From Tubulanus polymorphus (taxonomy: Eukaryota > Animalia > Nemertea): a stretch of 64,000 nt of DNA. The DNA is taken from assembly GCF_964204645.1 (NCBI RefSeq), contig NC_134036.1:9341859-9405858 (forward strand), given 5' to 3'. Positions 25,499 through 55,215 of the stretch are shown here, piece by piece (position 1 is the first letter of the stretch; each line of letters begins with the position of its first letter). The notes under the pieces are model-generated. The model ran no database searches. It saw nothing but the letters and a program-made list of their open reading frames with translations, and had not been told where the DNA came from. The position numbers and the translations under genes were made by a program.

Positions 25499-25673
25499 TG
25501 AAGTGAGTAATTGACATCTATTGTGTTGTACTGGTTTAGATTTTCCAACGAATTGCTATATTAGATCTTTGATCCAGGCAATGAACTACTAAGTACTGTT
25601 AGCTATCATCAGTCTTGATTTTTAGCGACTGCATCTGATGACTATGAATTTTTAATTTGTGTGAATAATCAAT

Positions 25674-30472: not shown

Positions 30473-30575
<103 letters not shown>

Positions 30576-32324
30576 TGAAAACATACTATTAACGGGGTTT
30601 GTGGGCTCAAACCCAATTGTGTGGTGCTATTTTAATACCCGTTTCTGGGGCATATATGTATAATTATATGCTAATGATATGCAAACCTCACAATTTATAT
30701 AGGCCTATATGCCCCATGAATTATATACGTTTCTGGGGCATATATGTATAATTATATGCTAATGATATGCAAACCTCACAATTTATATAGGCCTATATGC
30801 CCCATGAATTAAATACATGCACCTATACATGTAACATAACTGAAACTATGCCCTTCGTGTGGAATACCTGAGGCCAAACGCTTAGACATTACTAAACAGC
30901 GAATTATCTCACTGCCTATTCTATTGTAAGCGACCGGGCAACAGTCGGTTCTAACAGGTCTGGGTCGATTCATAACAATTGCGATAGGCTTTCCTACAGA
31001 GCTTCGTCCAAGTAAGATATACAACTTCCATATTTCTCCTTGCTTTGTCGGAATATTCTCTACTCTTCACTTCTATTCACATTTTTGAAATATGGCTCTA
31101 ATTGAGGGAATGAAAGTCCTTTCAAAGCTTTCAATATCCAGATACATCTGACAACAGAAACAAAACAAAATTTTCAATGAAAATTGGAAATCTCTTTATT
31201 AGGAAAAAAGCATTAGCAAATTTACAAACTCTACAAGATAATTCTGATATATTTATCAACCCTAGAATTGTAAACCACGAGGAAGTTGGATATTCTGCCA
31301 ATGGAATATTTTAATATTATTCATGTCATACATTCAAAATACAGTCGATACCTTCTGACTCAAATCATTTAGGACCAGTGATTTTCGTTATTTCAGTTAG
31401 GCGATAATTCAAGTTCCAATATGGAAATTCATGCTATGTTTCATAAGAATTGTGTAAAGATTAGCTGACCTGGAACTCGATGCGTTTACTATCCCAAATC
31501 AAATATGTTATACCGGTAGTCATTGGATTGTATGATATTTTGTCAACTGCAGATAAAACAGAAACTAATCACATTTTTTAATCATTATGTTCTCAACCTG
31601 AAATCAATGGCCTACAACAAATATACCTGATAGGAATGAGATTAGTCTACAAAAATACACCATTTACTTATGTTCACATCATTAAAAAAAAAACCTTCTC
31701 CACATTTTCTCCTGTAATCTAGTTCATTACATTTCTATAACAGGTGTAAGACTGGCATGAGGGAAATTCTAACATTTATTCAGATCGGTCATTTTTCATT
31801 TACTGCTTTAACAATTTATATACCGGTAATATATTTGATTTTGTTTAAACATTTTCTTCTAAACAGTAATCATTGCGCTTTAATAAAAGGAGAAATCGAT
31901 CAGAACAAAAACAAGCAATCATTGAAAGAAAACTCCACATACGGAATATCAATATATAGATATTATTTACATTGGGCACAGTGCTTAGTGGCAAAAACAA
32001 AGTTTCACATATCTTTAATTAGGACCATGGGTCCAGTACGACCAAATGAGTAAATTTTAGTTTTGAGCGAAAAAATGTATTTTTCTCGGATTTACGATCG
32101 CTATCTTGGTGCATTATATATGCATGTCCAACTTTCTCCAAAACTCACTCGCATGGCAAAACAATCAATACTATGTTCTATATGTACGTTCTTGCTACAG
32201 CTAAACAATAACGTAATTATTACAAAACATAAATAAAGTGAATTTGACGCATCGATTGACGCGTCAAAAATGCTATTTTAATTTTGACAGTATATTTACG
32301 CCATACATTTAGAGGTTCCCTATA

Positions 32325-35300
32325 TTATTTCGTTTTCTGCTTCTTCGAGATAATATTATGTAGCCTCGTTCGAACCTGAGGCAAAGTTCGGCTACCACCA
32401 AGTTCTTCAACTACTTTTCTCAAGTCTACTGCTGGTGCCATTCGCTTATTATTCAAATAGTTATGCAATATCTTACAAAAAATATCTGTTTCTCCCTTTG
32501 TCCAGGGTGCCCTCTTAATACGTGACTTCTCATCTGAAACAAAATCATATAAAAATGCTACACAAACCATTGCATCAAGACTACTGATAGGTTCTCACAA
32601 TAGGCCCCATTTCCCCTAGGATTGTTATACCGTCCATAAGGTGGTTTAATCACTATGGACCCTATCCATGAACTTACTTTGCGCTTCAGATTGGTTAGTT
32701 TCCATCTTTGGCGGAACTTCTGCATCGACCATGTCATTGTCATCACTGTCATCACTGTTTTCACTGTCTTCACACTCAGTCCACTTATCGGCATAATCCA
32801 AGGATAATGGGAGTGCTAAAACGTTATCAATGAATAAATGCACATGTACACATACACACACACGGGTGACTGCTGTCATAGCAGAGAATACTAAAATATT
32901 TAATCTATCAGTAAAGTCAGACTTACCATCGGGATCAATATCCTCCAATGACTTTCCTTTGAATCTTGCCATAATGCCATTTTCGGCAGCCAATAGCGCC
33001 TTCGCTACCTTCGCTTTTTCAACGAGTGAAGATTGGAGGCAATATACATCTGCGTGAATTTTCACATCGTGCCCCATATGATCAGCCACCATCTTCAACT
33101 CGTTGGGCTTCATAGACAAAATCTGAAGTTATAAACCCAAATACTGGCTTTAGGGCTTTCATCAATTTCAAATCACTTCACAATATAATTTCCATTCACA
33201 AGTATCATTATAGCCGATCATTGATTTATTATAATCATTGCTTGTTATGTCTTTCGAAGACCAGAGCTTTACCTTCTTTATAGATATTCTTGATGAATGA
33301 AGGTTCTATTTTATATTCTTAAAAATTTCATTCACTAATACATACAGGGCTGGAAATTAGGCTTGTATGATAGTACATGTAAAAGCACTTCATGATAAGG
33401 TATGTCCTGATACGGATGTTTTAGGCCTATACAGGATCCGATATCAGCACTTGTCTATTATCACTTGTCATCCTTTTATGATAGGTTTTATATACTGGTT
33501 AACTGAATGTAGAATTGTGGGACATACATAAATAGGAAAAATCACTTCATGGTCAGGTAGTGTCTTGATATGATGGGTTTTATATGTCACTTAACTGGAT
33601 GTAGAATTGTGGGACATACATAAATAGACACTTCATAAATAGGTAGTGTTCTGATATGATGGGTTTAATATGCTATTTTACTGCATGTAGAATTGTAGGA
33701 TATATATATAATGGGAAAATCCTTTCATGATCAAGTACTGTCTAGATGATTACATGACCTTAACGGTCACATGCCCTCTAAATTTCAGTAAGTAATTAAC
33801 CTAATGATTCTTTTGAATATAGATAACACCTGATATCAGGAAGACAGAAAAAAATCCCCCATATACATGTAGTCTTAAATTGTCAGGTTATTAATCAGGT
33901 AATATAAATATACAACATTTATAATTGTAATACTGTGGTTTGTATTTTAAAGAGGTTTGTAATGCTTGCAATAAGACTAATCCTAGTTCATTGGTAAATG
34001 ATAAACCTACTTGTAGTGTAGTTGCAAAGAAAGATCGGAGCTTCGTCGATCTAATTCGTTCAGGTGCATTCAGTCCGGGACACAATTTTGTCATTTCACG
34101 CATTGCAGTACAACCGTCAAGTGGTGTGTCAGCACGTTTCCTAAAATGAATGATGGATTTGCAATGCTTGCACAAAACCTGTCACGATATGAACTAAAAA
34201 AGGTTCAGATTGTATTGCTTTGTAAAGTATATACTGTATACAAAGACATTTTTCTAAAAAATGGCTGCATGGCCTGGTAAGCACTAACTTATTTGATTAT
34301 TCAGCATGTAGATGCCCACGAACAAAACTATATCAGTTGTGATGAGAGATTAAGATTTTTATCAGGACTATTAATCAATTGACATTCAAAAAGGGAATGA
34401 TTGTACCTTAATAATAATAAAATAAACCTTGCATTAATCGAATCCATTCAAGAAACATTCAAAATCCGTATTGCAATTGTTAATGGGTTAATGTTATTTG
34501 AATAGGAAAGTGCAAACACTGTATAAATCAGAAAATAGCATTCTTCCTAGAAAGACCCACATAGCTTTATCTGTGAAACTTTACACTGACATTTCAGATA
34601 GACTTCTATCCATCTTCAGAGTTATATAAAAACTCTTCTAAATCGCTGAAGATGGATAGAAGTAAAATCTATCCAAATTGTCAATGTCAACAGATATACG
34701 TTGTTGAATGTTCTTATTATACACGCTATATACACGTCTTTTATACACGTCTTTTATACATGCTAAATAGAATGCCACAAGTCTAATTGATTTCAGAATT
34801 GATGTTACCTAGCAAAAATGAAGTCACTTGTACTTTGTCTGGTATCGAGGATATGTTCGATAGCTTTAACCATCTTCTCAGTAAGCAGAATGTATACACC
34901 TCGAATACTGCGAGTGCTCTTCCCTCGGATTTCTATTACACGCATTCTACAAAAAACTCTCCAAAATCAACCCAACATATCTTGTAAATTAGATAAGAGC
35001 ATATGACTAAGACAATTTTAAAACAACAATTACCGTTTGACCAAAAGCTGCTCAGCTAGAGACAGTGATTGCAGGATCTCTTGATTCTGATCGGCATCCG
35101 GCACAATATTTTCGAAATCGCTCATGATCATTTCTTCCACTTCTGATATCCGCCTTCGGTTGAAAAGGACTATACGGACAAGAACAGCATAAGCAAGATG
35201 TTTCCACTGTTTTGAAGTAGGCTCATGTATCATCAACGCTTTATCAATTTCAGAGTCGAGCCAATCTTTAAAGACTACTAAGTCATCTGCCACTGGATGT

Positions 35301-36121
35301 GTATTGCCTTGATTGAGTTTCCTAAGTTTAATCCTTCGATTAGCAACACACGAAACAGTATTGTTCCAATGGGCCCGATAAACTACTTCGAAATCTCTTC
35401 CCTCTTCTTGCATAATTTTGTCTCCTTCAAAAATCCCCATGCTCATTTTGAGGACAATGCAATGTTTGATGTAAATCCCCAAATTTATTGCCACACTCGG
35501 GGAATCTTTTTCCAAAGCTAACTTCTTAACACATTTGACTATCTGATGGAAATGTGGCCCTCTCAGGTACGAGGAAAGCGATATCCAGTTTTCTTCGCCA
35601 TTGTTCTCGTTCAGGGCTTTCAGTAGCATACCGAGTAAACGGACCTTTGTTCTCAAGTTTGCTAGGTCTTTTCGGCGCTGCTCCTTTGCAGTGCCTAAAC
35701 GCGAGTACAATGACAAAGCAAATTCACCAATTAATTCGTCTTTTTCGCAAATGCCAGGAATGCCAGGGTTTGCAACTGTTTCTCGCATTCTGCTGAATAT
35801 CAAGTTTAATGCAACCGTATCCTCATCGATTCTTGGTACAAATGGTGATAGCATGTTTCGAGAGGTTCTTATGTAATTGATGTCTGGTTGTTTTGCCATT
35901 GGTTTGAAGTGGCAACGTGTCGCATGCTCGGAAAGGCATCCCTTGTAGAAAAAACCCTTACAAAATTCGCATGGTACGTAGTCCACTGCATTTGGTGGTT
36001 TATCCGTTTTATTGGGTCTACGGACAACGACCAACGTACCATGTCCTTCTTTTATCACTTTACAATTGTGCCGAAAGTTTCCTTCATTCTGAAGTAAGCG
36101 CATATGTTTTTTTTTTTTCAT
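32325..36121 (-). CDS. Tyrosine recombinase and C-terminal Myb/SANT-like domain of element B
   Basis: LFNRRRISEV, IRGKSTR, RSTKLRSF, DHMGHDVKIHADVY (R-K-xxxR-H-Y catalytic set intact); RAPWTKGE..RTLPQVRTRLHN. Confidence 0.92.
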
Positions 36122-39100
36122 TTGGATCGCGTATCAGATGGTACTTTATAATTTCTGGTTCAGACGCGTGAATACTGCACAAATGCGAGGATATTTTCGA
36201 AGTAAACACACGCTTACAATACAAACAATAATCTGCCTTTCGGTAGTCCCGCTTGCCATCTACTGACTGGTATGTCGGAACAGTAACATGTTTCAAATGA
36301 GCCGACAGTCTTGACAGATAATCTCCAAAGTCTTCTTCCTCAATATCGTTATCATTTGGATCAATTTCATGGAGATTATCATCATCACTATCACATAGAT
36401 CGTCATCAGGAATGTAATCATCTTCAGAATCTGATATACATTTTCTTTTTTTCCGCTTTTTTGGAATGTCAACATCAATTGACTGATCTTCAGAGTCAGA
36501 TGAGTCAATTTGCCTTTTTTTCTTTATAATTGCATCCTGTTGTGAAGAGGTTCCAGCTTTCGGTTCAAATACATCTTTTGGCAGTAAAGGGGCAAAATGA
36601 TCCGGATTCCAGTGTCCAGGTTTAAGTTCTGAATGTGTAGTCCACATTACGAGTAAAGGTGCTTGCCTCAATGTGCCAGTCAAATTTTTTCTTGGATTTA
36701 ATATATGGTTCATTATAGGCACACGATTATCCAATAACCCATTAACCGAGGGGTATACTGATCTTATCCTCCTATCAATAACTGTTGCGAGTGCCTGTAT
36801 TGTCAGCATCGAAGAATAACTGTTGTGTATTGCACAAGCAATACATGCATCTGCGAAGGATGGTGAAATCAAATCGAATCCAAATTCGATACTTCGAGTT
36901 TGATAGAAGTCAGAATTCTCAACCATTTCGATACAAGTGCGAACACGAAGTTCAGTTGCTAGATCTTCACACCCACAAAGACCGACTGATACTGCATTGA
37001 ACAAACAGTTACCATCACCAGATACATCTGCAGGCATGAGCACCCCATTTACCATATCACCACATTTCTGCATAATTTCTAATGACCTGCCATGTACCAT
37101 CAGTTTTCTGTCCAAACACTTATACTCAAGTTCCCGTATCCTACTTGCAAAATAGCCAACAGTAGTTTTCAGATTCTCATAGCTTTTCTGTGCACTCAGA
37201 GTGAGCATCTTCAGAATGTTTGAGTAATCAATAGTGGTAGTAGCTGAAGATAAAATAAAAGACATCTATCAAGTGTTAATGAATACCTAGGAAACTACCA
37301 CCAAAACTTAACATGTTTGGTGTTGCAGATCTATTCTTATGAATTTAAATCAAATCTGGTAGACCTAGCCATTTTACATGTACCCAATTCAATACAATCA
37401 AAAGTCAATTTTCCGGCTTCTCAATAAAAATCTTGTCAAAGTTGTATCTAAATCCAATATCTAAAAAACAAATATCCTACTGAACTGAATTTTTGACTTT
37501 TTGACCTCGTAGAAACTGTTGAATTAATATTCACATACATTGATAACATCTTTGCGTTATTTCATGTTATTTTTGAAGGCATCATTGGACTACAAGTTTT
37601 TATCACTCTAACCTCTGTCTAACAATACTTCAATGTTCAATTCCTGCTGGTGCGAATACACAAACTATTTTCCATGAAAATCAATGAAATGACAGAAAAT
37701 TTCATGTGCTTTTTCACTTTGCAATAGATAATAGGTACAAAACTGAATGGTTCCAAAGTAAATTTCAAATTTCCAAAGTAAATTTCAATGTTCAAATTAA
37801 TCCTAGTGGGGAGAACAATATCGGATAATTTCTATTCAACAAAACAAATTCAACATAAATAACAACAACATAAATAACAAGTTAAAATTGTTGGTACCCT
37901 CCTTAAAAAAAAAACCATTCCAACCATGAGCGAGGACTGGTGAGACTAAGATGACTCAAAATTTGCCTGATCCAAACATATCTAAAGATCTAGAAATTGA
38001 GACTACAGATTACAGAGACTACTACAGAGACTACGCCATTTTCCTCTGATTGATCCAATTTTTCCAGTAGTAATAGGCTCTGGGCAGAGATACATATATT
38101 ATATATACCAAACATCAAACAAGTTCTCCATGAAAACTTTTGTTGAACAAATACTGTTGGTCACATATCTTGAATCTGATAAGACCAGTTTTTGAGCTGC
38201 AGTTGTCTCAAAAGTACTAGATACATGTATTAAGACAATCCTTTAAAATATCTCCAAAGCTTCCTAAAATGCTTTGATTCTACCTATGGATGGACAATTG
38301 ACACTAGAACGCAATATGCCTAATACAACTTTAGAACAAGATTTTTCAGTTAATGTGTAAGATTTTTCAGTTAATATGCACCTTTTTAAGGTAGATAAGA
38401 TCATAACGTTCACTTACCGCAGGTTCCCTCCTTGTTTTCATAAAAAAATGGTAATTCTTCATCGCTATCATAGTCATGTGGCAGAAAACCTAAATAGATT
38501 AGTTTCAATTATTTCAATTATCCATACTGGCATAATTTTTCGGCATTGACCCTCCCCCTTAGTATCTACGTGTTAATGACACAAGCTATGCTCAACACTT
38601 TCAACGACCGAAGGATATTTTTTATGAAATAGGGAGTGTAAAGTAATATGGATTGCAATTTATTTTTATATCACAGTTTTTGATGCATTTTAGGACATGT
38701 CTTGTCCACAAAGTATGTGCTCCTTGAAAGACAAAAGTTCGTACAATGTGCTCTAATCCCCACCCACAAAAGAAGGGAAACCACTTTTACATGATTTCAC
38801 TCTCTGAAGACCGATTGCATTTTGACTTTCTTCTCGCAAGGCATTATCTTGCAAGTCGATCGTTTTCCTTACACTCACAAAATATGAATGTTTAGGATGA
38901 ACAAAAACCAGGTTTAAAGGTATAGTACACTTCAAATGTAACGTACTTATTATAGCTTGAGATATCGAAGATTCAAGTAATTCCTCGCCATCTGAAAATT
39001 CTAAAAGTAGAGAAAAGCCAAAACATCTCAAAAACTATTTGAAGAAAATATATATTTCAATTATCAGTGGGTAAGTAGTGTTAGCTAGTCCAATTTTGGG

Positions 39101-42100
39101 AATAAAACAAATTCCAAAGATAACTATATTGGCAGCTCATTGATGTTCAATCATTCAAATAGCTGATTATTGGAAATGTGCATCTTGTGAATAATAAAGC
39201 TATGTAACTATCAGTAACTGCATAAATACGGTAGATATCATCGATACAGCTATTAAATTGTGAACAACTATAACTGCTTATGCAAACAAGTGTTATCTTA
39301 CCAGAACAGGTGGATTCAGAATCATTGTCAACATCACCAGAAGGGCCACATGTCAATGCATCATCTTGAAAAATAAATGATATGGTGACAATTATTGCTG
39401 CATGTTACAAGTTAAAGAATTATGCAATACGTTAATTTACCAGAGCAGGTAAATTCAGAAACTTTCTTTATATCATCACATCAATACATTATCTTGAAAA
39501 TCAAATGACAGATATAATGATACAGCAACCTGACAATTATTGCAACATAACATAAGTAAAGCATGCAATGGTGATATAATGTATTAGATTATAATGTAAC
39601 ATAGAATTGTGATGCATAAAATTGTTCAAATTCTTCATGAACAGGAAAGGTCTATTTCAACTTGTTTGAAAAGGATATTGGGTTTGGGATAGTGTCCTGA
39701 TATGGGATTTATATGCTGAATGTAGAATTGTAAGATATGCATAGGTAGTAAAATCACTTCATCATTAGGCAGTATCCAGATATTGTGGGTTTTATATGCC
39801 ACCTAACTGAATGTAGAATTGTAGGACATATATGAATAGTAAAATCACTTCATCATTAGAGAGTGTCCCAATATGAAGGGTTTTATATGCCACCTAACTG
39901 AATGTAGAATTGTAGGACATATATAGACAGTAAAATCACTTCACAATTAGGTAGTGACCAGATATGATGGGTTATATATACTACTTAACCAAGTACAGAA
40001 TTGTAGGACATACATAAATAGTAAAATTATTTAATGATTAGATAGTGTCCTGATGTGAATGGTTTTATATGCCACTTAAGTAAATGGAGAATTGTAGGAC
40101 ATATGGTGAATCTTTTCTCATTAAGGTAGGATAGGTTTTATATGCCCCTTTACTAAATATAGAACTTTTAACACATATGAATAGAGAAATAGAGTTTATT
40201 TACCAGAAACTGTGAATTCAGAAATTTTCTTTTCACCAGAACACTCACGAATCAATGAAATATCTGTAAAATAAAATGACAGATACAATGATACAGCAAC
40301 CTGTTGACCACTATAACTGCATTATACAAGCTAAAAAGTTACATAATGAGTAAACTTACCAGAACACGTGAATTCAGAAACTTGTTTTGAATCATCACTG
40401 GAACATTTACTCGTCAATACATTATCTAGAAAATCAAATGACGGATACAATGATACAGCAACCTGTTGACCACTATTACTGCATTATACAAGCTAAAAAG
40501 TTACATAATGAGTAAACTTACCAGAACACGTGAATTCAGAAACTTGTTTTGAATCATCACTGGAACATTTACTCGTCAATTCATTATCTAGAAAATCTAA
40601 TGACGGATACAATGATACAGCAACCTGATGACCACTTTTACTGCATTATTCAAGCTAAAACGTTACATAATGAGTAAACTTACCAGAACACGTGAATTCA
40701 GAAACTTGTTTTGAATCATCACTGGAACATTTACTCGTCAATACATTATCTAGAAAATCAAATGACGGATACAATGATACAGCAACCTGCTGACCACTAT
40801 TACTGCATTATACAAGCTAAAAAGTTACATAATGAGTAAACTTACCAGAACACGTGAATTCAGAAACTTGTTTTGAATCATCACTGGAACATTTACTCGT
40901 CAATACATTATCTAGAAAATCAAATGACGGATACAATGATACAGCAACCTGTTGACCACTATTACTGCATTATACAAGCTAAAAAGTTACATAATGAGTA
41001 AACTTACCAGAACACGTGAATTCAGAAACTTGTTTTGAATCATCACTGGAACATTTACTCGTCAATACATTATCTAGAAAATCAAATGACGGATACAATG
41101 ATACAGCAACCTGTTGACCACTATTACTGCATTATACAAGCTAAAAAGTTACATAATGAGTAAACTTACCAGAACACGTGAATTCAGAAACTTGTTTTGA
41201 ATCATCACTGGAACATTTACTCGTCAATTCATTATCTAGAAAATCTAATGACGGATACAATGATACAGCAACCTGATGACCACTTTTACTGCATTATTCA
41301 AGCTAAAACGTTACATAATGAGTAAACTTACCAGAACACGTGAATTCAGAAACTTGTTTTGAATCATCACTGGAACATTTACTCGTCAATACATTATCTA
41401 GAAAATCAAATGACGGATACAATGATACAGCAACCTGCTGACCACTATTACTGCATTATACAAGCTAAAAAGTTACATAATGAGTAAACTTACCAGAACA
41501 CGTGAATTCAGAAACTTGTTTTGAATCATCACTGGAACATTTACTCGTCAATACATTATCTAGAAAATCAAATGACGGATACAATGATACAGCAACCTGT
41601 TGACCACTATTACTGCATTATACAAGCTAAAAAGTTACATAATGAGTAAACTTACCAGAACACGTGAATTCAGAAACTTGTTTTGAATCATCACTGGAAC
41701 ATTTACTCGTCAATTCATTATCTAGAAAATCTAATGACGGATACAATGATACAGCAACCTGTTGACCACTTTTACTGCATTATTCAAGCTAAAACGTTAC
41801 ATAATGAGTAAACTTACCAGAACACGTGAATTCAGAAACTTGTTTTGAATCATCACTGGAACATTTACTCGTCAATACATTATCTAGAAAATCAAATGAC
41901 GGATACAATGATACAGCAACCTGCTGACAACTATTACTGCATTATACAAGCTAAAAAGTTACATAATGAGTAAACTTACCAGAACACGTGAATTCAGAAA
42001 CTTGTTTTGAATCATCACTGGAACATTTACTCGTCAATACATTATCTAGAAAATCAAATGACGGATACAATGATACAGCAACCTGCTGACCACTATTACT

Positions 42101-45100
42101 GCATTATACAAGCTAAAAAGTTACATAATGAGTAAACTTACCAGAACACGTGAATTCAGAAACTTGTTTTGAATCATCACTGGAACATTTACTCGTCAAT
42201 ACATTATCTAGAAAATCAAATGACGGATACAATGATACAGCAACCTGTTGACCACTATTACTGCATTATACAAGCTAAAACGTTACATAATGAGTAAACT
42301 TACCAGAACACGTGAATTCAGAAACTTGTTTTGAATCATCACTGGAACATTTACTCGTCAATACATTATCTAGAAAATCAAATGACGGATACAATGATAC
42401 AGCAACCTGTTGACCACTATTACTGCATTATACAAGCTAAAAAGTTACATAATGAGTAAACTTACCAGAACACGTGAATTCAGAAACTTGTTTTGAATCA
42501 TCACTGGAACATTTACTCGTCAATACATTATCTAGAAAATCAAATGACGGATACAATGATACAGCAACCTGTTGACCACTATTACTGCATTATACAAGCT
42601 AAAAAGTTACATAATGAGTAAACTTACCAGAACACGTGAATTCAGAAACTTGTTTTGAATCATCACTGGAACATTTACTCGTCAATACATTATCTAGAAA
42701 ATCAAATGACGGATACAATGATACAGCAACCTGTTGACCACTATTACTGCATTATACAAGCTAAAAATTTACATAATGAGTAAACTTACCAGAACACGTG
42801 AATTCAGAAACTTGTTTTGAATCATCACTGGAACATTTACTCGTCAATACATTATCTAGAAAATCAAATGACAGATACAATGATACAGCAATCTGCTGCC
42901 AATTATTACTGCATTATACAAGCTTAAGTTATTTCATGAGTTTACTTACCAGAACAAGAATCATGATTTTTTTTTTCACCAGATTTGTGTTGACGAAAAG
43001 ACTTGGAAGTCAATACATTATCTTGAAAATGAAATTACAGGGTGTTAATACAATACCTAGAGTAGGTAATTTCCCAAAATATAGGCTTACATGTTGCCAG
43101 TAGACCATCTTGAATGTGATCCATGAAAATTACATGGTTTTATATCAACCTCATTTTGAGTGTGTCAAGAGAAAGTAAAAAATCGACAAAACATGTATGC
43201 CTGGTTACTGTCTTTTTTCCAATCCTACCGTTCAATTTGTAGGGAAAGAAATCAAATTACCTGCCAAGGGTAGAAATAGGAAAATTGCAAGGCGGGTTCA
43301 AAAAGTAAATACGAGGCATTTTCGGTTAAAGCAGCCATATCAAATTCGTTAAGGAGGGTCCCTCCATCTAGGGTTAGATACACTTTTGAATAAATCAACC
43401 CTTAAAGATGAAATTTCTGAGATGTTAAATTTATAGGTTTAAGTTATCTCTGTACGAAGGGCAACTTCAAAGGGAAGGCACGAGTCTAGACCTTCGAGAC
43501 CACCCGCTTGATACGCCCCTGCATGCATTTCAAAGATCATGTTTACTTCATGAGAATGGATTATTTCTAACATAAATAATAACCAATTTCATTGATGTTA
43601 AAAATATATTTTTATCAAACGATACATACTTAGACCATCAGGAAATTATAGCACTGTATAGTATTCACCTTAAAACAAAACATTTATCATGGTGGGTGGC
43701 CAATAGGACTGAACCTAAGTTTTTTTACACAAAGAATACATGCTTAACATTGCTCATTATCTAAAATATGCATTATGAGATAATTCAATGAAACAAAAGG
43801 GAACCATAAAAATTGAAAAGCATACAACAGATATATATATATAGAATATATATAAGGTTAGAATATATATAAGGTTAGGCCTATCACATGCAAAATGATT
43901 CAAATTCGTCTATTTCTGCTGTTCTGGTGGACGGCTCAACAAAGTATACCGGTAAATGTATAAACTGAGTTTATGGACATACAAATCTTATAGAGAAAAA
44001 GAGCAACATTTCTGAGGGGTGGATGCAAGCTGGATTTATATGTGCATAATAAAAGGCATAATTCAACTACCCGCCCTTGGTTGTGTTCCAACCTAATGCT
44101 TCTAAGCCAATACTGTATCATTCACTTATACAAATTGGGTAATGATAGTTTATGGTCGTTGGTGTATCAAAATGAATCATCTACCATCATAGGGCATACC
44201 TATAAGAAGCAAGTTGCATCTAACATAACCTATCTTATCTTCAAAGTCCAATGATATTTATTAACCGCAGAATTAACACATATTCCTGATAGACACCCTC
44301 AATTCAGATTCATGCACAGTTATCACACACAGTACATGAAGAAAATCTCATGGCGCAAATGTAGCCTGTATACAGCAAGTTTTTATGTAAGCCATGAAAT
44401 GCAAGGCAAATCTGAAATTTACATTTGAATATGATAGACTCATTTTGCTTTTATTCTCCATGCTTAAACCAAATTCCATCTACATAGGCCTAATGACAAT
44501 CGCAAGCTTCAGCATGCTGGGTGTACTTTGCAAGTTTGACTAAATCTAGAAAATTTTAATCCCAACAGGTTAACAAGCTTACCTGAGGCATTAAGTTCTT
44601 TTTTGTTAGAAGCCTATTTATATGTTGAATACAAAAATAATTTTCCAGAATGGCATAATGGAAGCAGTGAAGAAATCAGCAAATAAGCAAATGTAGCTCA
44701 TTCATGCAGCACAGAAATACAATATGGTACCCAAATGCATCAGTAGAAACAAAGATACTACACGGCGTATCTATAGTACAATGATTAGTTGTAGAGGAAC
44801 TTTTATCGTGATTAAGAAATTGATCAGTCGATGTTCTTAGGATCAGTACATACACACAGAGAAGGGTGAGGGGGTTTGAAAATTTGTATTAAAATGTCTA
44901 TGGTTGTGTATGAGAGGGGGTTTGCATTTATAAACTGCTGTATGCACCATACTCCATGTAGTATGATCATTGATGTTGGACCATCGTAACTCATAACCAA
45001 AGTTTAATTTTTTCAACACCAGCATAAATCATTTACTGATAATTCATTAATAAAGACAAGCGTTACGAATCATAAACTGCTTTCTTCTCGGGACCCGCTG

Positions 45101-48100
45101 TCAAGGATAATTGGAGATATTGAGGTTATGTTCACGATACTTTTTTTTCAATTGACAACTTCAGTCGTCATTCTGATAAAAATTACAAGCTTTGAACTTA
45201 GGGCTAATTCTTTGATGCACAAATGCTTGCATTAGAGGTTGTTACTATAAGGCACTAAAGCGTATACAAAAAGTATGGATGTATGGTGAAGGGGAGGGTA
45301 AGGTTCTAACTGAATGAGAGCTTCGCTGCAACAAAATTGGATGAAAATAAATCATCATAATTTACCTGTCTCCACCAATAATCAGTCACCCCGTAATCAT
45401 ACCGCAATTCTGTTTTGGGGGGTATGTCCTTAATAGCAAAAAATGCAATATGGGGCCTTCCTTCAGATATGACGGTTTTGGCTTTACAGTTTTCTTTGCC
45501 ACCCCACCCATCATTGATGAGCCGTCCCAAACTACCATCATCAATTGAGGCATCAATGCTGAAATGGTAAAAGTCATATTTAGAGTATTCAATTAGGCCT
45601 AATATACTTTAAGAAGATGGGTGGTATCAAATTATGATACAGGCCTACAGGTAACAGTTAGGCTTTGAATGACTTATTTTAGTTAAAGTGTAAACTAAGT
45701 AGCCTGATGGGCAATATCTGGTTAGAAAATCAATAGACCTACATACCACAGAGAACTGAACTTTTTGTCTTGAAATTCAAAGACATATGTATCGTCATCC
45801 CCGATTTCCTTCACATCACGGAGTAGCCCACGATATTCCACCAAAAAATCCCCTCTACAAACTGCTTTCTTTGTGAATAATCCATATCCTTAATCAGAAA
45901 AAAGTATTATCTTTGATTAAAAACCATTCCTTCAGGTCCTACATTAAAACCTAGGGTCCAGGGACACCATGCCCAGATGAGAAAAGGTTTGAAATGCTCA
46001 ACCATCTGGAAATGTTAATATTCAACGTCTGGTGAACTACAGAAACCATGACATAAATTTTGCATTGATTGTTTATTTATGTCTTTACTATGTATTGTGG
46101 TAACAAAATATGCCAATGTATTAATAGGTATGATATGGAAATACTCAGTTTCTGCTATTAAGTCAAGGAAGCTACCGATATAGGTTTTTGAGGATTTCAG
46201 ACTGAGATTTTTGAGCTATATGGGCACCAAAAAGGTCACAGGACGGACTTCTTGTGTCTGATCAACTCAATTGTTTTAATGCTGATGGGCCCCTGGGCAT
46301 TAAAAATATTATTTGAAAGATCAAGATAATTGAAGCGTCTTAAAAGATTTCCCTTGAAAACATCAAAATCTGTAAAAATGCTGATTTCGGCAAACAGAAA
46401 TCTGCCATCTTGATTCTGACAGGACCAGTCTTTGGGCTGTAGGTGTTTCAGGGTAATATATGTATAAACCAAACATCAATCCATGTGTTTTCTAAACTTC
46501 CCAAAATAACTGGATTCTGTCTACGGACTGACACAACAGATATTCTATAAAAAAGTGGATATCATACAGATGCAGCAGTAATTTAGTAAACTAGTGGTCC
46601 AGGGACACCACGCCCACTTGGGAAGTGGTTAGAAATGCTTAACAAACGGAATATTCAACGCCCCCTGGTGAACATATTAAGAAAGCAATGACCTTACAAC
46701 TCACCACAATCAATGATGGAACATGTCATGAGCTACAATTTTGTAATTGATTGTGGTTACAAAATATCCTTAGAGACCAATACAATATGAAAATACTAAT
46801 ATAATATAATAAAAGTTATTTAGCTCTTCAATGCCCCTGGTGGCCTAGGGCCGATTCTTTTATGCAGTACGGATAATCCGGACGCTCCATTTCCATTCTT
46901 TTATTGATCAGGTGACTATTTCTGGAGAGTTCGGAGAGTCCATTCTCTCCAATCTGTCGACCGGTGTGATTGCGGAGAGACCACGTGACAAAATGGCGAC
47001 GCATGAATTTTGCCTCCTAAAACTCAGAAAAGTTACGGAAGCCGCCATTTTGATTCTCAACAACTATTCCATTATGCACAAATCAGGATATTCAATCCGG
47101 AGAATACGGACTGCATAAAAGAATCGGCCCCATAATCATAGAATATGTCACAAGATACAATTTTGCCATTCATTGTGGTTACCATACCAATGACCTTGAA
47201 ACTCATACAAAATATCAATAGGTACCAATTCTGTAATTCTGTATGTAATTCTATATTCAACTCTCCCTGGTGGTGAGAACAAAAACCCGGGTAACCCCAA
47301 TTCCACGTGAGGAGATGAATACTATGACAGCGATACTATAGGCCTATATCAAATATCAAGACTATAAGTCAAAACTTGTCCATAGTTTCCTTCAAAAACC
47401 TTTTTCTGAGGACTGATGACACGAAGATGGTCACTGATTGCATCACGCTTGACTGATCAAAGTATCTGTCTGATAGGCCTGTGTAAGAGCCCTTCTCATA
47501 GTATAACCAGATCTCGGAATTCAGGCCAAAAATGACCTTGGGCATAAAAAAGGTCACATGATGGCCATGTTAAGTCTGATCTACACAATTTTTCTTATGC
47601 TGATGCACCGGGGATACAAACAGATGTGAATGATCAAGATAATTGATCAAAGGGTTTCAAAATTTCCCTTAATAACATCAAAAATATGTAAAAAGTGCTG
47701 ATTTTGCTGAACAACAATGGCAACCAGTCGGCCATCTTGATTCTGATCAGGCCAGTTTTCGGGCAGAAGATGTATCTAGATACATGTAAAAACTAAAGAT
47801 CAAGACAATCCATTGAAGCGACTTCAAAACTTCCCAAAAGAACTTGATTCCGTCTATGGACAAACGGACGACAGATGAAAAGTGAACGCAATAGTCCACT
47901 GGGACTTAAGTCCCAAGTGGGCTAAAGATTATGTTGTCCTCATTATATATCAAAAACACTTCTCGGCCTATAGGCCTCATTAGGTTTAGGATAGGGTTGG
48001 GGTCTAGAAGGTCAGGAGGGTTAGGGTTTGATAGGGTTAAAACATTCCATTTAGGTATAATTTAGCCTACCTATTTCGCTATTGACAACTTTTTTTTCGA

Positions 48101-48173
48101 ATGCCTCTTCTGGATCTTTGCCAAATTTAATAAATTCAAGAGCCACCTGACTTGGTGTCATGCGTCTCGGCAT
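32325..48173 (-). CDS. Predicted ~1620-aa SET, repeat array, OTU (vertnin-like), C2H2, tyrosine recombinase, Myb-like fusion protein. Exons: 48173-48071, 45888-45747, 45558-45366, 44613-44583, 43021-42950, sixteen 66-nt exons (42855-42790 down to 40425-40360), 40263-40204, 39364-39302, 38991-38947, 38489-38418, 37243-35034, 34946-34809, 34140-34011, 33122-32927, 32815-32678, 32533-32325
   Basis: All junctions are GT-AG with compatible phases. The summed length (4857 nt) is a multiple of 3 after removing one base from the T12 run at 36107-36118. Domain motifs are listed in the sub-features. Joining the SET exons to the YR exons in one transcript is inferred. Confidence 0.72.
33380..33745 (-). 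repeat. Diverged inverted copies of the 91-bp satellite unit in a YR intron
   Basis: ACTGAATGTAGAATTGTGGGACATACATAAATAG..AATCACTTCAT is the reverse complement of the 50.4-53.5 kb unit. Confidence 0.8.
36620..37060 (-). CDS. OTU-like cysteine protease domain (vertnin-like) within the element B gene
   Basis: VSGDGNCLFNAVS (catalytic Cys), ELRVRTCIEM, IQALATVIDRRIRSVYP, WNPDHFAPLL (catalytic His). Confidence 0.88.
39690..40185 (-). repeat. About 5 inverted copies of the 91-bp satellite unit in an intron next to the exon array
   Basis: Repeated TTTTATATGCCACCTAACTGAATGTAGAATTGTAGGACATATAT..GTAAAATCACTTCA. Confidence 0.85.
40351..42940 (-). repeat. 162-bp tandem array, 16 near-identical units; each unit is a 66-nt phase-1 exon plus a 96-nt intron
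   Basis: TAAACTTACC recurs every 162 bp from 40351 to 42781. The minus strand reads TTTTCTAG|66 nt|GTAAGT, encoding DNVLTSKCSSDDSKQVSEFTCS. Confidence 0.93.
45366..48173 (-). CDS. SET domain (KMT5A/PR-Set7-like) exons of element B
   Basis: MPRRMTPSQVAL..IG|YGLFTKKAVCRGDFLVEYRG..YVFEF..CIDAS..LGRLINDG..NC..PHIAFFAIKDI..ELRYDYG..WW. Confidence 0.9.
45950..47925 (-). mobile_element. Two inverted, diverged HINE copies (~45950-46530 and ~46590-47925) in the first SET intron
   Basis: Reverse complements of the 21244 element: CTAGGGTCCAGGGACACCATGCCCA (45951), CTAGTGGTCCAGGGACACCACGCCCA (46591), GTCCCAAGTGGGCTAAA (47910-47926). Confidence 0.7.
46848..47130. mobile_element. MITE (PIF/Harbinger-like) nested in a HINE
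   Basis: TIRs GGGCCGATTCTTTTATGCAGT / ACTGCATAAAAGAATCGGCCC. Confidence 0.7.
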
Positions 48174-49366
48174 CTCACCTGAAAAATACAACCAAGAATA
48201 AGGTGCTATGATAATGGGCAGGCTTATTTGTATCTTTGCCCTATTAACCGAGATATTAATACTGCAAATTGGGCAGAACACAAATCCTCACCTTGAAACA
48301 TAAAAAAAATAAAAAAGAATTAAGCGATTGATTTTTGCAAAAAAAAAACCATTTAGACCAACGGCCACGTCACTGCATATCATATCAATAGCAGTAGCAC
48401 TTGATATAAATTACAAAAATTGGCTGTCAAAAATATACAATAAAGAAAAAATTCATTGTGCAACACCGGTGCTTAGTTCCAAGCTTCAAGGCCTAAATAT
48501 GCTAGAATTCTGTATCTACTACTAGGGGGCCTAAATAAGTGAAACTAATTAGTAAGCAGGCATGGCTATAGGCCGGTCCATGTCCTACAATGAACCTGTA
48601 ACAATGACAGGTTGGTACCGGTATTTGGATTATAATCTAGGCTGATTCAGCAGGTTAGCTGTAGCCTACTGTGCAGTGGTAAAAGTATCAGCCTGTAGCG
48701 CGGAATATCAGTCAGCACATCAGGTTTGGTTTCTATGATGATCGGACTGTTTTACAAACCACGACAATTCCTATACCGGTAGGTATTTGTAGGCCTATTT
48801 GTATATACTCTAGGGCCTCTCTAAGTTCTGGATATTATCAACGTTAGCAGTAAAAGTACAAATTACAAGCCTATCTGAGATGACTCGGTCAAGACTAGAG
48901 ATAGGGCCTAATACTACTAGTAAGGTCAGATGTAGTCTAGTACCTAGCCGTTGTTTTCCAAACAGGTTGTAGGTAGGGAACCGTAACAACAACTGTTGAA
49001 CAGCAGTTGTTACAGTCTGTTCAGACTAGTACTAGGTCAGATGGTATTCAGGCCATCAGGGATTAGCTGGGAGGAGGCCTTTATTTTATTAGATAATAGC
49101 TTACCACCAACCGATTACTAAATACTAACAAGGACAGGTTACTCACATCCAATGTGCTAGTGCTGGTGTACTATAGGCCTATAAGTATAGTTGAATGTGT
49201 GTGTAAATGAATTTAGCGTTTTCTGCAATCCTGATTAGAAATGCGGTACAATGTATGTCAATATAAGAAATTTTGTAGCCAGAATTTTAATGAAACGGGC
49301 GTAAATGTAGTAATGAAAATATTGCACGTCCACCGGTTGTTTACAACGCAGCAACGACCTTCAACG

Positions 49367-49425
49367 TAGTCTGAATACCGGTCGTTGTTACCGGTTCCCT
49401 AGAACGACGGCTAGGTACTAGACTA
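49367..49425. mobile_element. 59-bp TAGTCT...AGACTA mini-element with a 9-bp TSD; related inverted copy at 48933-49028
   Basis: CCTTCAACG|TAGTCTGAATAC...GTACTAGACTA|CCTTCAACG. Confidence 0.65.
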
Positions 49426-50389
49426 CCTTCAACGCAGCAACGAACTAACCGGTAGCCCTAAATACCGAACAAAACCGTTAAATACCGACTTTATGTCACT
49501 AATCAATTTTAGATGCGGGCATAAGGCTAATTTATTTTCGTGTGAAATCGATCTTTTTGGGATATTTCGCTTAACTTTTTGAACACATACCCTAAATTGG
49601 TCTTAACGACCAGTGTACGGTAACTGTGCAGCCTGAATAAATCCTCGTTTTATAGCCATTTTAGACTGTATTGAATTATTGCCAAAGGGTTTTCATTTTC
49701 TCGTGTCGAAAACAGAAAAGATCAGCCATTTTTTGAAATTCTAAGATGTTTCTTGTGTTTCCGTGCCTACGAACCATGATTTTCTTTGAATAATTTGCAA
49801 ACATTTTCAAATGGCAAGGGCCTAGGCATAGAAAAATATTGTTAAAATTGATTTACGTAACGGTAGTTCATTAAATGGGGTCTATTTTCTCTAATTGAAA
49901 TGAGTTAAAGAAGACTTTTTTTTAGTAATCCTCCAATGCAAAACAGTTTAAAATGGATAAAACGATGATTTACTTACAGTTTCACTGGTCGTATTAAGAC
50001 CTAATTGAGGTACCCGGTATGTGTTGAAAAGTTTAGTTTATAGGGAACTCAAAAAATCGATGTCAGACCAAAAAAAAATTAGAATTTAGGAACGGACATG
50101 CAGATATGTCAGGCATACACTGCTAGTCTATTCACTTTTGTGTTTCATCAGTTTTCTCGAGATAATTTGTAACTTTTGTGAGCAAATACTTCAAACTAAT
50201 GCCATTCAAGCCAGAACTGTGCAGTCGGACATCGTTTTTGTATCCATCTTAAACACTGTATTGAAGGATTGTTAAAAAGTCTTCTTAAACTTATTTATGA
50301 CAGAGAAAAGAGACTTCACGAATCGCACCGGTTCTTGAAAGATCATAATTACATCAGGGCAATATCTAATCTTGCATTGATTGTACTAG

Positions 50390-53300
50390 TCATGTCCTAC
50401 AATTCTACATTCAGTTATGTGGCATATAAAACCCATCATATCTGGACACTACCTAATCATAAAATGATTTTACTATTTATGTCTATTACTACATATGTCC
50501 TACAATTCTATATATACAATTCTATATCGCTGGCATATAAAACCCTTCATATTGGCACATTTCGTAATGATGAAGTGATTTTACTATTTTTATATGTCCT
50601 ACAAATCTATAATTAGTTAGGCAGCATAGAAAACTCGACTCGTAAGAAACTACCTACGGTAATCATAAAGCATTTTACTATTTATATATGTCTTACAATA
50701 CTGCATCAGCTAAGTGCAGTACAAATTTATATTCAGTTAGGTGGCATATAAAACTATCATATCAGGGCGCTATTTGTGGATGTCTTACAATTCTACATTC
50801 AGTTGCGTGGCATATAAACCCACGGCATCAGGACACTGCCTGATAATTTTACTATTCGTATATTTCCTACAAATCTACATACATTTTAAGTGGCGTATAA
50901 AACCATTCATATTAGGACAATGGACACTCTCTAATTATGAAGTGATTTTACTATTTATATATGTCCTACAATTCTACCTTCAGTTAAGTGGCATATAAAA
51001 CCCTTTATATTGGGACACTCTCTAATGATGAAGTGATTTTACTATTTATATATGTCCTACAATTCTACCTTCAGTTAAGTGGAATATAAAACCCTTTATA
51101 TTGGGACACTCTCTAATGATGAAGTGATTTTACTATTTATATATGTCCTACAATTCTACCTTCAGTTAAGTGGAATATAAAACCCTTTATATTGGGACAC
51201 TCTCTAATTATGAAGTGATTTTACTATTCATATATGTCCTACAATTCTACATTCAGTTAAGTGGCATATAAAACCCTTTATATTGGGACACTCTCTAATG
51301 ATGAAGTGATTTTACTATTTATATATGTCCTACAATTCTACATTCAGTTAAGTGGAATATAAAACCCTTTATATTGGGACACTCTCTAATGATGAAGTGA
51401 TTTTACTATTTATATATGTCCTACAATTCTACCTTCAGTTAAGTGGCATATAAAGCCCTTTATATTGGGACACTCTCTAATGATGAAGTGATTTTACTAT
51501 TTATATATGTCCTACAATTCTACCTTCAGTTAAGTGGAATATAAAACCCTTTATATTGGGACACTCTCTAATGATGAAGTGATTTTACTATTTATATATG
51601 TCCTACAATTCTACCTTCAGTTAAGTGGAATATAAAACCCTTTATATTGGGACACTCTAATTATGAAGTGATTTTACTATTTATGTATGCCCTACAATTC
51701 TTTAATCAGTTTCGCAACATATAGAACTCATCATCAAATTTATATTCATTTAGGGGGTATTTAAAACTATTCATGTCAGGACACTACCGAATCCTGAAAT
51801 GATTTTACTATTTGTGTAGGTCCTACAATTGTACATGATCAGTTGCGTGGCATATAAAACCTACGGCATCAGGACACTGCCTAATGATTTTACTATTCGT
51901 ACATGTCCTACAAATCTACATACATTTTAAGTGGCGTATAAAACCATCCATATTAGGACAATGGATAATCATGCCATTATTTTACTATTTGATTATGTCC
52001 TGCAATTCTACATCCAATTAAGTGGCACATATATCGGGACACTGCCTAATCGTGAAGTGATTTCACTATTTATATATGTCTTACAATTCTACATCCAGTT
52101 AAATGTCATATGAAAAAAATCGTTCATACCTATTGGGACACTCTCTAATTATGAAGTGATTTTACTATTCGTATATGTCCTACAATTCTACATACATTTA
52201 AGTTGCGTATAAAACCATTAGTGTCAGGACACTAGATAATCATGGCGTTATTTCACTATTTAAATATGCCCTGCAATTCTACATTCAAGTAAGTGGCATA
52301 TAAAAACATTAAAATCCGGACACTACCCAATCATGCAGTAATATTATTTATCAAAAATCCATAGGAGCAAAAACAATACAAATCTCATTTTCTAATGAGT
52401 AATATATATTTATTATAGTAAACGTTTTCGGGAGTTACATTATCCCCTCTTCAGGCATAGCGCGCAAGTGATTAAATTTTCATATAATACGTTTTTAGAT
52501 AATTAACTACTAGTCAAATATATTCACTCAGTAATTTAGATTGTGTATAATTAATTATCTTTATATTGTAATCATCTTGTCACTCAGTTAATTGAAATTG
52601 TTTGTAATTAGCTTCGTCCTATTCTATATAAATACCAGTATGATATGAACATTTAATCACTTGCGCGCTATGCCTGAAGAGGGGATAATGTTACTCCGGA
52701 AAACGTTCGCTACAATAAATATATATTACTCATTACAAAATGCGATTTGTATGGTTTTTGCTCCTATGGATTTTTAATTATCTTGACCCTCTACCTAAGA
52801 ACTAATATTATTTATATATGTCCTGTAATTCTACATTACGCTGCGTGGCATACAAAAGCATATCAGGACACTGCCTAATCATGAAATGATTTTACTATTC
52901 ATATATGTCCTACAAATTTACATACATTTAAGTGGCGTATAAAAACCCTTCGTATCAGCCCACTAGATAATCGCGACGTTATTTTACTATTCATTATGTC
53001 CCGCAATTCTACATTCAGTAAAGTGGCATATAAAACCCACCATATCTGGACACTCCCTAATGATGAAGTGATTTTACTATTTATATATGTCCTACAATTC
53101 TACATGCAGTAAAATAGCATATAAAACCCATCATATCACACACTACCTAATTATGAAGTGATTTTACTAATTGTATCTACACATCTACATTCAGTTTATT
53201 GGCATATAAAACTATTCATATCTGGACACTACCTAATCATAGAGTTATTATAATATTCATATTACACACTACCTAATTATGAAGTGATTTTACTAATTGT

Positions 53301-53470
53301 ATCTACACATCTACATTCAGTTTATTGGCATATAAAACTATTCATATCTGGACACTACCTAGTCACAGAGTTATTATAATATTCATGTCCCCCAATTATG
53401 CATTCATTTAAGTGGCATATAAAATCAATTATATCAAGACACTACGTAATCATGACGTGATTTTACTACA
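50390..53470 (+). repeat. 91-bp satellite array inside element B; homogeneous core ~50920-51700 with diverged flanks
   Basis: TGGGACACTCTCTAATGATGAAGTGATTTTACTATTTATATATGTCCTACAATTCTACCTTCAGTTAAGTGG.ATATAAAACCCTTTATAT recurs at 51011, 51102, 51193 and onward. Confidence 0.93.
52352..52802 (+). mobile_element. Penelope-like inverted-repeat insertion with hammerhead-ribozyme core and 13-bp TSD
   Basis: Arms 52353-52484 and 52643-52775; CTGAAGA GGGG..CTCC GGAAAAC at 52674-52704; TAATATTATTTAT at 52339-52351 and 52803-52815. Confidence 0.7.
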
Positions 53471-55132
53471 GTCAATCTTGGTGTTTGCCTATCACTCAGG
53501 ACTCGGCTTTTTAGTATAGATTAGGTGATGTACGGATACAAGATAACCCATAGTTCTACTAATGAATTATCAACCATATAAACTGATTTAAGTGCATAAC
53601 CAGTACAATAGCCGGTTTACAGATGTTTAGATTGTCTACGTAAACTCTTGAACTTAAACTACTATCACACTTGAAAGCAATACGAAATACCAGCCATCAT
53701 TAAATGGAGAAGCTTTAGACTTAGACATTGAGCGATTACTTCTAAGTTACTCATATTTCCCACTGACCTCAATTACTAAATTAGTTGTTAATATTCTTTT
53801 CACTACAGATGTAGGTCTACGTTCCCGACAACTGATACGGGTTACATACATAGTCTAACATAGAAATGGAGAATGGGTCTACGAATTATTGAGTACAAAT
53901 TAGACACACAGGGAATGGAAGCAATATATTGTAAGAACAAGCACTTATAATGATAAAGCGGGGATGGCATAGCCGAGGTTGACTGTATTCTATTTGTTCC
54001 CTGGTACTAACTACAGATAAGGAAAAAACCTTCCTATCTGAATACTGCCTGATAACAAAATGATTTTCATGATTATGCAATATGGCCTACAATTCTATTA
54101 AGCATATCAAGCGTATTTGTTTGTATCATTAAATATCCCATAAATGGTTTCTGACAATGACAACTACTTTTGAGTTTATCAAGTCGGCAAACCATGGTTT
54201 TGATGATTTCAAAATATCAATGCAATACATACTTCGGACAATAAACAGTAATGATACACTTGTATTGATCTAATCAAAGAATGAAGTCCATCTCTATTCG
54301 ATTTACATAAAAAAGAATTCCTTCAATGCAGTGTATGTAAAACGAATAAAGAATCGACGGTTAAGTTCAAAGCACGTGCTGGTCGTTTTAAGGCATGTAC
54401 CTCTAAAGCAGAGTACATAATGGTACCCTTCGTCCATTTAAAAAAGTTGAAATATACTGCATTTGGCCTATGGATAAATGTCTCCAATGATGTTACATGT
54501 AAAAAGGACATGCAAGATCGGCAAACTAATAAAGAAAGCTTACCTTTTTCCTTTTTGGCTAGGCTTAGACTCAATGTTCTCGCATCACCGCGAATAGTAA
54601 CTGGACATGCGCATTGACCTATCGGTCGAGTTCATTGTTTGCTGTAGGAGATGAACCCTACCGAACCTCGAAGCAAAGGATTATTTTAATTGCCCAATGA
54701 ATTTCATATGAACAATGTGTTGAGAACACGCGTTTTTGGAAAAAAATATATCTTAATGTTCTTGAAGATTCTTGCAGTTTGTAAGTGTAAATCATATACA
54801 CACTACACAGCCGTACACCCTGCTCTGCTCTGTATGGGCTCTCCCGAACTTCCGGAGTTCTGCCAGGTGATGGTTTCTCCTAACTTCTGACGTAGAAAAA
54901 GGGGCGGAGCTTATCTGTTCTAACCGTCAGATGGGGCTGCTGTATTGCTTTATATATAAATATCTTTGTCAGACCCGATTACGCCTACGACTGCAAGTGG
55001 GTGATTGAACAATTTTCTGAGCGTTTGCAAGGTGTAACAATTACGGGACACTTTGTATGCCCCGTAATTTTTCACCACCCCGCAACAAGGAAATTAAAAA
55101 GACAAACGCCCCGTTAATCGTACATTATCTTA

Positions 55133-55133
<1 letters not shown>

Positions 55134-55215
<82 letters not shown>
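55134..55215. repeat. (TA)41 microsatellite at the 5' end of element B
   Basis: Directly visible. Confidence 0.98.

What the first reader, a model, noticed from the sequence alone, without database searches (positions are those of the whole stretch)
32325..48173. One polypeptide predicted to join a histone methyltransferase, a deubiquitinase-type protease and an integrase
Seen: a phase-consistent splice path links SET (KMT5A-like), repeat linker, OTU (DGNC...DHF intact), acidic/NLS tract (PKKRKKRK), C2H2 finger (CLYC..HLCSIH), YR and Myb-like domain. Known: SET plus YR occurs in an uncharacterised animal family, KMT5A methylates H4K20, and OTU domains remove ubiquitin; I do not know a description of all of them fused. 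Inference: a transposon that edits chromatin at its own locus or target (anti-silencing or target opening). The OTU might instead process the polyprotein.
Basis: partly seen in the sequence, partly recalled or inferred. Interest (0 to 1): 0.87.

Follow-up and report, generated by a model that had tools for sequence, protein, structure and literature searches.

The report
Recombinase transposon carrying chromatin-modifying enzymes
This is one of five near-identical copies of a recently active 24.6-kb jumping gene of a ribbon worm that inserts into (TA)n repeats with its own tyrosine recombinase and carries a histone-methyltransferase and a deubiquitinase-type module; the single fused protein depends on a 31-base exon that the one available RNA skips, and this copy also has a frameshift.

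Summary
All named domains are real and lie in a 24,559-bp element (30575-55133) of Tubulanus polymorphus. Five copies, ~99.9% identical over the coding exon, sit in (TA)n arrays at unrelated loci: a CryptonV-like tyrosine-recombinase (YR) DNA transposon. SET shares the transcript, but the one spliced RNA contig and RefSeq join SET exon 3 to the linker out of frame, giving a 149-aa SET-only protein. The ~1,620-aa fusion needs a 31-nt microexon (44613-44583) not seen in RNA. Similar 3n+1 microexons follow SET in Dreissena and in an unrelated SET-OTU-YR contig, and urchin has SET and YR in one exon, so a regulated fusion is likely (~55%), not shown. Among 203 YR-bearing database proteins, 19 carry SET, 5 OTU, none both. 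The SET-YR family includes members of the embryo-activated 'KMT5A expansions' of Hydractinia and urchin (PMC10368294), not recognised there as transposons. The scan reported this element before from other copies (s1-513897, s1-527008). Enzyme activities untested.

The parts
30575..55133 (-). Whole element, 24,559 bp, YR DNA transposon; gene runs on the minus strand
   Evidence: identical ends in 5 copies with unrelated flanks
30475..30574 (.). (TA)50 target array, left; shared with a decayed sister element
55134..55215 (.). (TA)41 target array, right
30575..30597 (+). Left end, CT...TTAACGGGG; probable recombinase binding arm (inferred)
   Evidence: same motif at both ends read inward, offset by 2 nt
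55109..55133 (-). Right end, CT...TTAACGGGG
   Evidence: donor at 54544; RNA contig holds ~243 nt upstream of SET exon 1
48071..48178 (-). SET exon 1 (ATG at 48173)
   Evidence: RefSeq P0214 start; RNA depth fits
45747..45888 (-). SET exon 2
   Evidence: spliced RNA contig
45366..45558 (-). SET exon 3, ends in phase 0
   Evidence: Pfam SET; spliced RNA contig
44583..44613 (-). Candidate 31-nt bridging microexon (phase 0 to 1); strongest donor of the intron, weak acceptor; not seen in RNA
42950..43021 (-). Linker exon A (phase 1/1); read in the SET frame it gives IMY-stop
   Evidence: RNA depth 7.03 = 24.5 x 54/188; RefSeq SET ends IMY
40360..42855 (-). 16 tandem 66-nt phase-1/1 exons in a 162-bp repeat; other copies have 4-5 fewer units
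38418..40263 (-). Four more linker exons: 40263-40204, 39364-39302, 39000-38947, 38489-38418
   Evidence: phase check; RefSeq P0001
35034..37243 (-). Large exon: OTU, acidic/NLS tract, two zinc fingers, YR N-terminal part
   Evidence: Pfam OTU; 744-aa frame in four copies
36107..36118 (-). A12 run; frameshift in this copy (A11 elsewhere); mutation or assembly slip
   Evidence: RefSeq splits this copy into P0015 and P0017
32927..34946 (-). YR catalytic exons 34946-34809, 34140-34011, 33122-32927 (K, R, H, Y intact)
32325..32815 (-). Acidic exon 32815-32678 and Myb/SANT-like last exon 32533-32325

Best explanation
A recently active, autonomous Crypton-type (CryptonV-like) DNA transposon. SHOWN: a 24.6-kb unit with fixed ends, five copies, always inside (TA)n arrays, carrying SET, OTU, zinc fingers, YR and a Myb-like tail on one strand; SET and the linker are on one spliced transcript. 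FROM YR BIOLOGY (inferred here): the recombinase binds the two inward-facing end motifs, excises a circle through the TA overlap and integrates into another (TA)n array. INFERRED SWITCH: skipping the 31-nt microexon gives a 149-aa SET-only protein (the form seen in RNA); including it gives the ~1,620-aa SET-linker-OTU-ZnF-YR-Myb protein, the likely mobilising enzyme, probably in germline or early embryo. INFERRED ROLE: SET (KMT5A-like, H4K20me1) and OTU (deubiquitinase) act on chromatin at the element or target, or OTU protects the recombinase from ubiquitin-driven decay. This copy cannot make the full protein as assembled and would be moved by sister copies. Odds: transposon 0.93; fused isoform exists 0.55; SET active on chromatin 0.5.
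For: Ends, flanks, TA arrays; TA arrays are 0.23% of sampled DNA. Copy identity 99.8-99.95% over ~4 kb, one copy with a 24-nt gap. 744-aa OTU-YR frame in four copies. Catalytic R871, K919, R991, H1017, Y1026 invariant in 11 relatives. Spliced RNA contig and its arithmetic, RefSeq 149-aa SET. With the microexon every join is GT-AG and in phase. Fusion-compatible structure in relatives: urchin SET and YR in one exon; Tubulanus family 3 SET donor in phase 1; Dreissena 22-nt bridge, 2/200 shuffles; contig L061 SET, 31-nt bridge, linker, OTU-YR all in phase; second Tubulanus family with the same SET-linker-OTU-YR order. In the skipped transcript the first in-frame ATG lies 1,400 nt past the SET stop behind 59 out-of-frame ATGs, so that form is unlikely to yield YR.
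Against: No RNA shows the microexon. Its acceptor scores -11.7 against a median of about 10 for used acceptors. On the combined acceptor-plus-donor score it does not stand out from chance; only a donor-centred test designed after seeing the data does (12/500). No database protein carries SET, OTU and YR together. Lineus relatives have no SET within 10 kb, so SET is dispensable. SET has Asp where SETD8 has the SAM-binding His (RLIND against RLINH) and a shorter insert region. No empty site or circle was found.
Confidence: 0.55

Rival explanations
1. Same transposon, two separate products: a 149-aa SET protein, and an OTU-ZnF-YR-Myb protein from its own downstream promoter or start (e.g. the Met early in the OTU exon). 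The microexon is a chance or decayed site in this family.
For: The only RNA contig and RefSeq give SET alone; RefSeq models OTU-YR separately in every copy; weak acceptor; Dreissena YR is also annotated apart from SET; Lineus YR stands alone.
Against: The SET transcript runs on into the linker exons; the 21 linker exons are stop-free only in the OTU frame and have no ATG in it; RefSeq starts lie in intronic repeat sequence and differ between copies; bridges recur in distant relatives.
Confidence: 0.33
2. The fused protein is the main, constitutive product, with OTU cutting it as a polyprotein protease.
For: A complete in-phase path exists; OTU lies between SET and YR; self-cleavage was suggested for Helentron OTU (PMC4067079).
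Against: The dominant spliced form skips the bridge; most SET-YR relatives lack OTU, so cutting is not required.
Confidence: 0.07
3. Not a transposon: a host gene cluster multiplied by segmental duplication or mis-assembly, SET being a chance neighbour.
For: Near-identity of copies can arise from recent duplication or assembly; no empty site seen.
Against: Similarity stops at the same base at both ends in all five copies, on five contigs, each time at a (TA)n array; copies differ in repeat number; divergent families keep the order.
Confidence: 0.03

Closest known systems
CryptonV (Kapitonov and Jurka 2012, as cited in PMC8869645) and Crypton in general (PMC3212892)
   Same: YR-encoding DNA transposon without reverse transcriptase; some CryptonV families insert specifically in microsatellites; some CryptonF/S carry an accessory C48 (Ulp1) peptidase.
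   Different: 24.6 kb; KMT5A-like SET and OTU modules, tandem exon linker, Myb-like tail. I found no paper giving SET or OTU for a Crypton. The Repbase entries were not available, so they may already note this.
Uncharacterised animal SET-ZnF-YR proteins (RefSeq models in fish, frogs, urchin, Hydractinia; PANTHER PTHR33480 from memory, untested)
   Same: N-terminal KMT5A-like SET, low-complexity linker, C2H2 finger, homologous YR, Myb-like tail.
   Different: OTU inserted before the finger; SET join rests on a skippable microexon; here shown to be mobile with defined ends and target.
Helentrons (PMC4067079) and Ginger elements (PMC2836005, listed only)
   Same: Transposons that carry OTU; some oomycete Helentrons also carry a SET gene.
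   Different: Rolling-circle or DDE chemistry; Helentron SET is Clr4-like and a separate ORF.
Expanded N-terminal-SET 'KMT5A-like' genes of Hydractinia and sea urchin (PMC10368294)
   Same: N-terminal SETD8-type SET with a shared C-terminal region; table S8 lists DNA_BRE_C in three genes active at 4 hpf; RefSeq members P0069 and P0132 are SET+YR homologs of this protein.
   Different: The paper reads them as host methyltransferases and its main text never mentions recombinase or integrase; no OTU hit in its tables; their mobility was not tested here.

Membership tests
Crypton | YR is the only transposition enzyme; no reverse transcriptase or DDE transposase | tested here: met
   ORF list and Pfam give only SET, OTU, integrase, Myb in the element
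Crypton | Catalytic tetrad R-H-R-Y | tested here: inconclusive
   R, K, R, H, Y invariant; the His of HxxR is Lys here and variable in the family; fold matches XerH
Crypton | 4-6-bp terminal direct repeats, no TIR | tested here: inconclusive
   both ends abut (TA)n, so a short direct repeat cannot be told from the target; ends share a short imperfect inverted motif
Crypton | Circular excision intermediate | not testable with these tools
CryptonV | Insertion into microsatellites | tested here: met
   5 of 5 copies flanked by (TA)n on both sides
CryptonV | YR groups with Repbase CryptonV proteins | not testable with these tools
   no CryptonV sequence available
DIRS/Ngaro YR retrotransposon | Reverse transcriptase-RNase H and long terminal repeats | tested here: not met
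   none in the element; gene has introns
Helentron | Rep/Helicase | tested here: not met
   absent
KMT5A/SETD8 | SET most similar to SETD8, with EYxG and ELxYDY tyrosines | tested here: met
   top PDB hits are all KMT5A
KMT5A/SETD8 | RLINH cofactor motif; C-terminal position of SET | tested here: not met
   RLIND; SET is N-terminal or alone
KMT5A/SETD8 | H4K20 monomethylation | not testable with these tools
   needs an assay
OTU protease | Asp-x-x-Cys and His catalytic motifs | tested here: met
   GDGNC and DHF; Pfam above cutoff
OTU protease | Ubiquitin cleavage | not testable with these tools
   needs an assay

The most novel reading that the evidence does not exclude
A widespread animal transposon group carries its own H4K20-type writer, and in some lineages a deubiquitinase, tethered to the recombinase; a frame-switching microexon chooses between a free SET enzyme and the mobilising fusion; and these elements are what the embryo-activated 'KMT5A expansions' of Hydractinia and sea urchin really are.
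Probability: 0.3. Interest if true: 0.86.

Novelty: new variant of a known kind. Interest (0 to 1): 0.68.

Why it matters
It gives a young, intact, target-specific example of a family that annotation treats as host 'KMT5A-like' or uncharacterised genes. If the enzymes are active, an animal DNA transposon writes and erases chromatin marks itself, a direct counter-silencing route. It offers a testable explanation for the lineage-patchy expansions of embryo-activated SETD8-like genes (65 in Hydractinia, 61 in urchin, one in Nematostella; PMC10368294). A 24-kb (TA)n-specific eukaryotic recombinase element is also of interest as a large-cargo integration system.

Tried and rejected
NDD-stop acceptor at 45172: no cover in the RNA run, rejected as the main form. 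Runs X2 and X3 cover introns and carry ligation-type loose ends, X1 is genomic; only X4 showed splicing. Search for an empty site through the 99% copy of the neighbouring element at C12:10.23 Mb: other side unrelated. No SET or OTU within 10 kb of Lineus, Lottia or Tegillarca YR genes. Full splice-score test of the bridge: significant only for Dreissena; L061 scored separately (acceptor 3.0, donor 9.8, tied as top donor). Gene structures for fish, frog and Hydractinia fusions were not on record. Literature searches for Crypton with SET or OTU found no description. The YR tree is the quick version only. Some pairwise counts were misaligned and are replaced.

Full report
Observation. Pfam finds SET on exon 3 (E 8e-8) and OTU above cutoff, and Myb weakly; the RefSeq protein of a sister copy passes the phage-integrase cutoff. 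A model of the catalytic region has XerH, XerA, Flp and Tn1549 integrase as best fold matches (top E 1.6e-3, probability 1.0). Arg871, Lys919, Arg991, His1017 and Tyr1026 (numbering of P0001) are invariant across 11 relatives; the His of the HxxR motif is Lys. RefSeq names identify the animal as the ribbon worm Tubulanus polymorphus.

The OTU and YR frames in this window are separated at an A12 run (36107-36118). Four other copies have A11 and a single 744-aa frame from OTU through the zinc fingers into YR. RefSeq splits this copy accordingly. Whether the extra A is real or an assembly slip was not tested.

It is a transposon. The unit runs from 30575 to 55133 (24,559 bp). Copies on contigs C1, C2, C6 and C7 begin and end at the same bases, each between (TA)n arrays with unrelated DNA beyond. 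Such arrays are 0.23% of the sampled DNA. Identity over about 4 kb of the coding region is 99.8-99.95%, with one 24-nt gap in the C1 copy; copies differ by four or five units of the 162-bp repeat. Both ends read inward as CT...TTAACGGGG. SET exons are identical in all five copies at matching distances, so SET is cargo of the element, not a neighbour. Microsatellite targeting by a YR DNA transposon is the published mark of some CryptonV families (PMC8869645); circular excision is the model proposed for Cryptons (PMC3212892). Neither a circle nor an empty site was observed here.

The SET join. SET exon 3 ends in phase 0; all 21 linker exons are phase 1/1. Run X4 has one 781-nt contig (depth 24.5) that joins exon 2 to exon 3 without the intron, so it is spliced RNA. 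The 95 nt after exon 3 are not listed directly, but four numbers agree. Depth in the bin of exon A is 7.03, equal to 24.5 x 54/188. Depth over the candidate microexon is zero. The match does not extend by the G with which the microexon would begin. And 72 nt of exon A plus the 23 nt that a k=31 contig must run into the first repeat give exactly 95 (the same rule fits the DNA contig starting at 42843). So exon 3 joins exon A directly, reads IMY-stop and yields 149 aa. RefSeq XP_074653171.1 is that protein. This is one sample, contigs drop minor forms, and RefSeq may rest on the same reads.

The case for a fused isoform. With the 31-nt exon at 44613-44583 every join is GT-AG and in phase, giving about 1,620 aa in an A11 frame. 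Its donor is the best in the intron; its acceptor is poor but follows an 81-nt AG-free, pyrimidine-rich stretch. Relatives favour fusion. In urchin, SET and YR lie in one exon. A third Tubulanus family has the SET donor in phase 1 and needs no bridge. Dreissena has a strong 22-nt bridge followed by tandem 66-nt phase-1/1 exons. Metagenome contig L061, from another branch of the YR tree, has SET exon, 31-nt bridge, linker exon and OTU-YR exon all in phase. A second Tubulanus family keeps the order SET, tandem linker exons, OTU, YR with a 16-nt candidate. A donor-centred shuffle test gave 12, 55, 19 and 84 of 500 for four introns and a tie for L061, but it was designed after the fact; the stricter test supports only Dreissena. 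The skipped transcript is a poor YR template: 59 out-of-frame ATGs precede the first in-frame one. Since the element has moved recently, YR is made either through the bridge or from an unseen downstream promoter. I put the fusion at 0.55.

Mechanism. Most likely the bridge is a splice switch, like the tissue-specific intron of the P element (own knowledge): skipping gives a free SET enzyme, inclusion gives the recombinase with SET and OTU attached. SET is closest to KMT5A/SETD8 and keeps its catalytic tyrosines, but has RLIND for RLINH, as do several fused relatives. Against the nearest sister family, 40 of 60 residues of exon 3 are identical and 24 of those use a changed codon, which points to selection on the protein. 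OTU keeps its Cys and His motifs. Action on chromatin at the donor or the target is inference; OTU as a polyprotein protease is less likely because most SET-YR relatives lack it.

Comparison with what is known. Of 203 YR-bearing proteins retrieved, 19 carry SET, 5 carry OTU (four Tubulanus models and P0111) and none both. OTU and SET are known cargo of Helentrons (PMC4067079) and Ulp1 proteases of some Cryptons (PMC3212892); I found no paper with SET or OTU on a YR transposon. Ayers et al. (PMC10368294) report 65 KMT5A-like genes in Hydractinia and 61 in urchin, mostly with N-terminal SET and switched on in early embryos, and read them as host enzymes. Their table S8 lists DNA_BRE_C in three such genes, and RefSeq proteins of both species are SET+YR homologs of this element. 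That these expansions are transposons is my inference; their ends were not mapped.

Verdict. A real, young, target-specific YR transposon with chromatin-enzyme cargo: a new variant of the Crypton kind. The triple fusion is likely but unshown, and this copy is frameshifted as assembled. Earlier scan notes on other copies reached the same basic reading; they are not independent support. The joined spliced model was not sent to any search tool.

Noticed in passing
window 20089-30474 (+): Decayed sister YR-Myb element (about 44% identical, in-frame stops) that appears to end at the same (TA)50 array, tail to tail with the finding; its 22971-30574 part has a 99% copy at C12:10234604-10242200.
   Followed up: partly
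window 92-4442 (-): Fragmented protein-primed DNA polymerase B with an intein-like insert; Polinton/Maverick-like remnant. Observed only.
   Followed up: partly
window 16668-19413 (-): Three ORFs resembling EnSpm/CACTA-type transposase proteins by motif (from memory); no Pfam match.
   Followed up: no
window about 35545-35631 (-): RefSeq model of the C2 copy (P0016) ends in DSQMC, which fits a cryptic intron inside the YR exon and would give an OTU-ZnF product without recombinase; possible second splice control.
   Followed up: no
window 30843-31149 (-): Further exon-like stretch inside the element's 3' end, used as an alternative last exon in RefSeq model P0013.
   Followed up: no
window 33477-33747, 39716-40104 and 50922-53386: 91-bp minisatellite inside the element, in opposite orientations in the gene body and the 5' region.
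   Followed up: no
G000:C2:9606968-9615626: Divergent SET-linker-OTU-YR family lying about 2-3 kb from the C2 copy of the element.
   Followed up: partly
L058:20522-20639 and window 30444-30474: Dreissena relative also has a long (TA)n array 3.5 kb past its gene; it and the neighbouring element show GGGG 12-20 nt inside the array, like this element's ends.
   Followed up: partly
L061:3903-5466: In the unrelated SET-OTU-YR contig the linker exon carries a zf-DBF finger; a crinoid relative (P0047) carries BRCT domains instead. The family swaps accessory domains.
   Followed up: no
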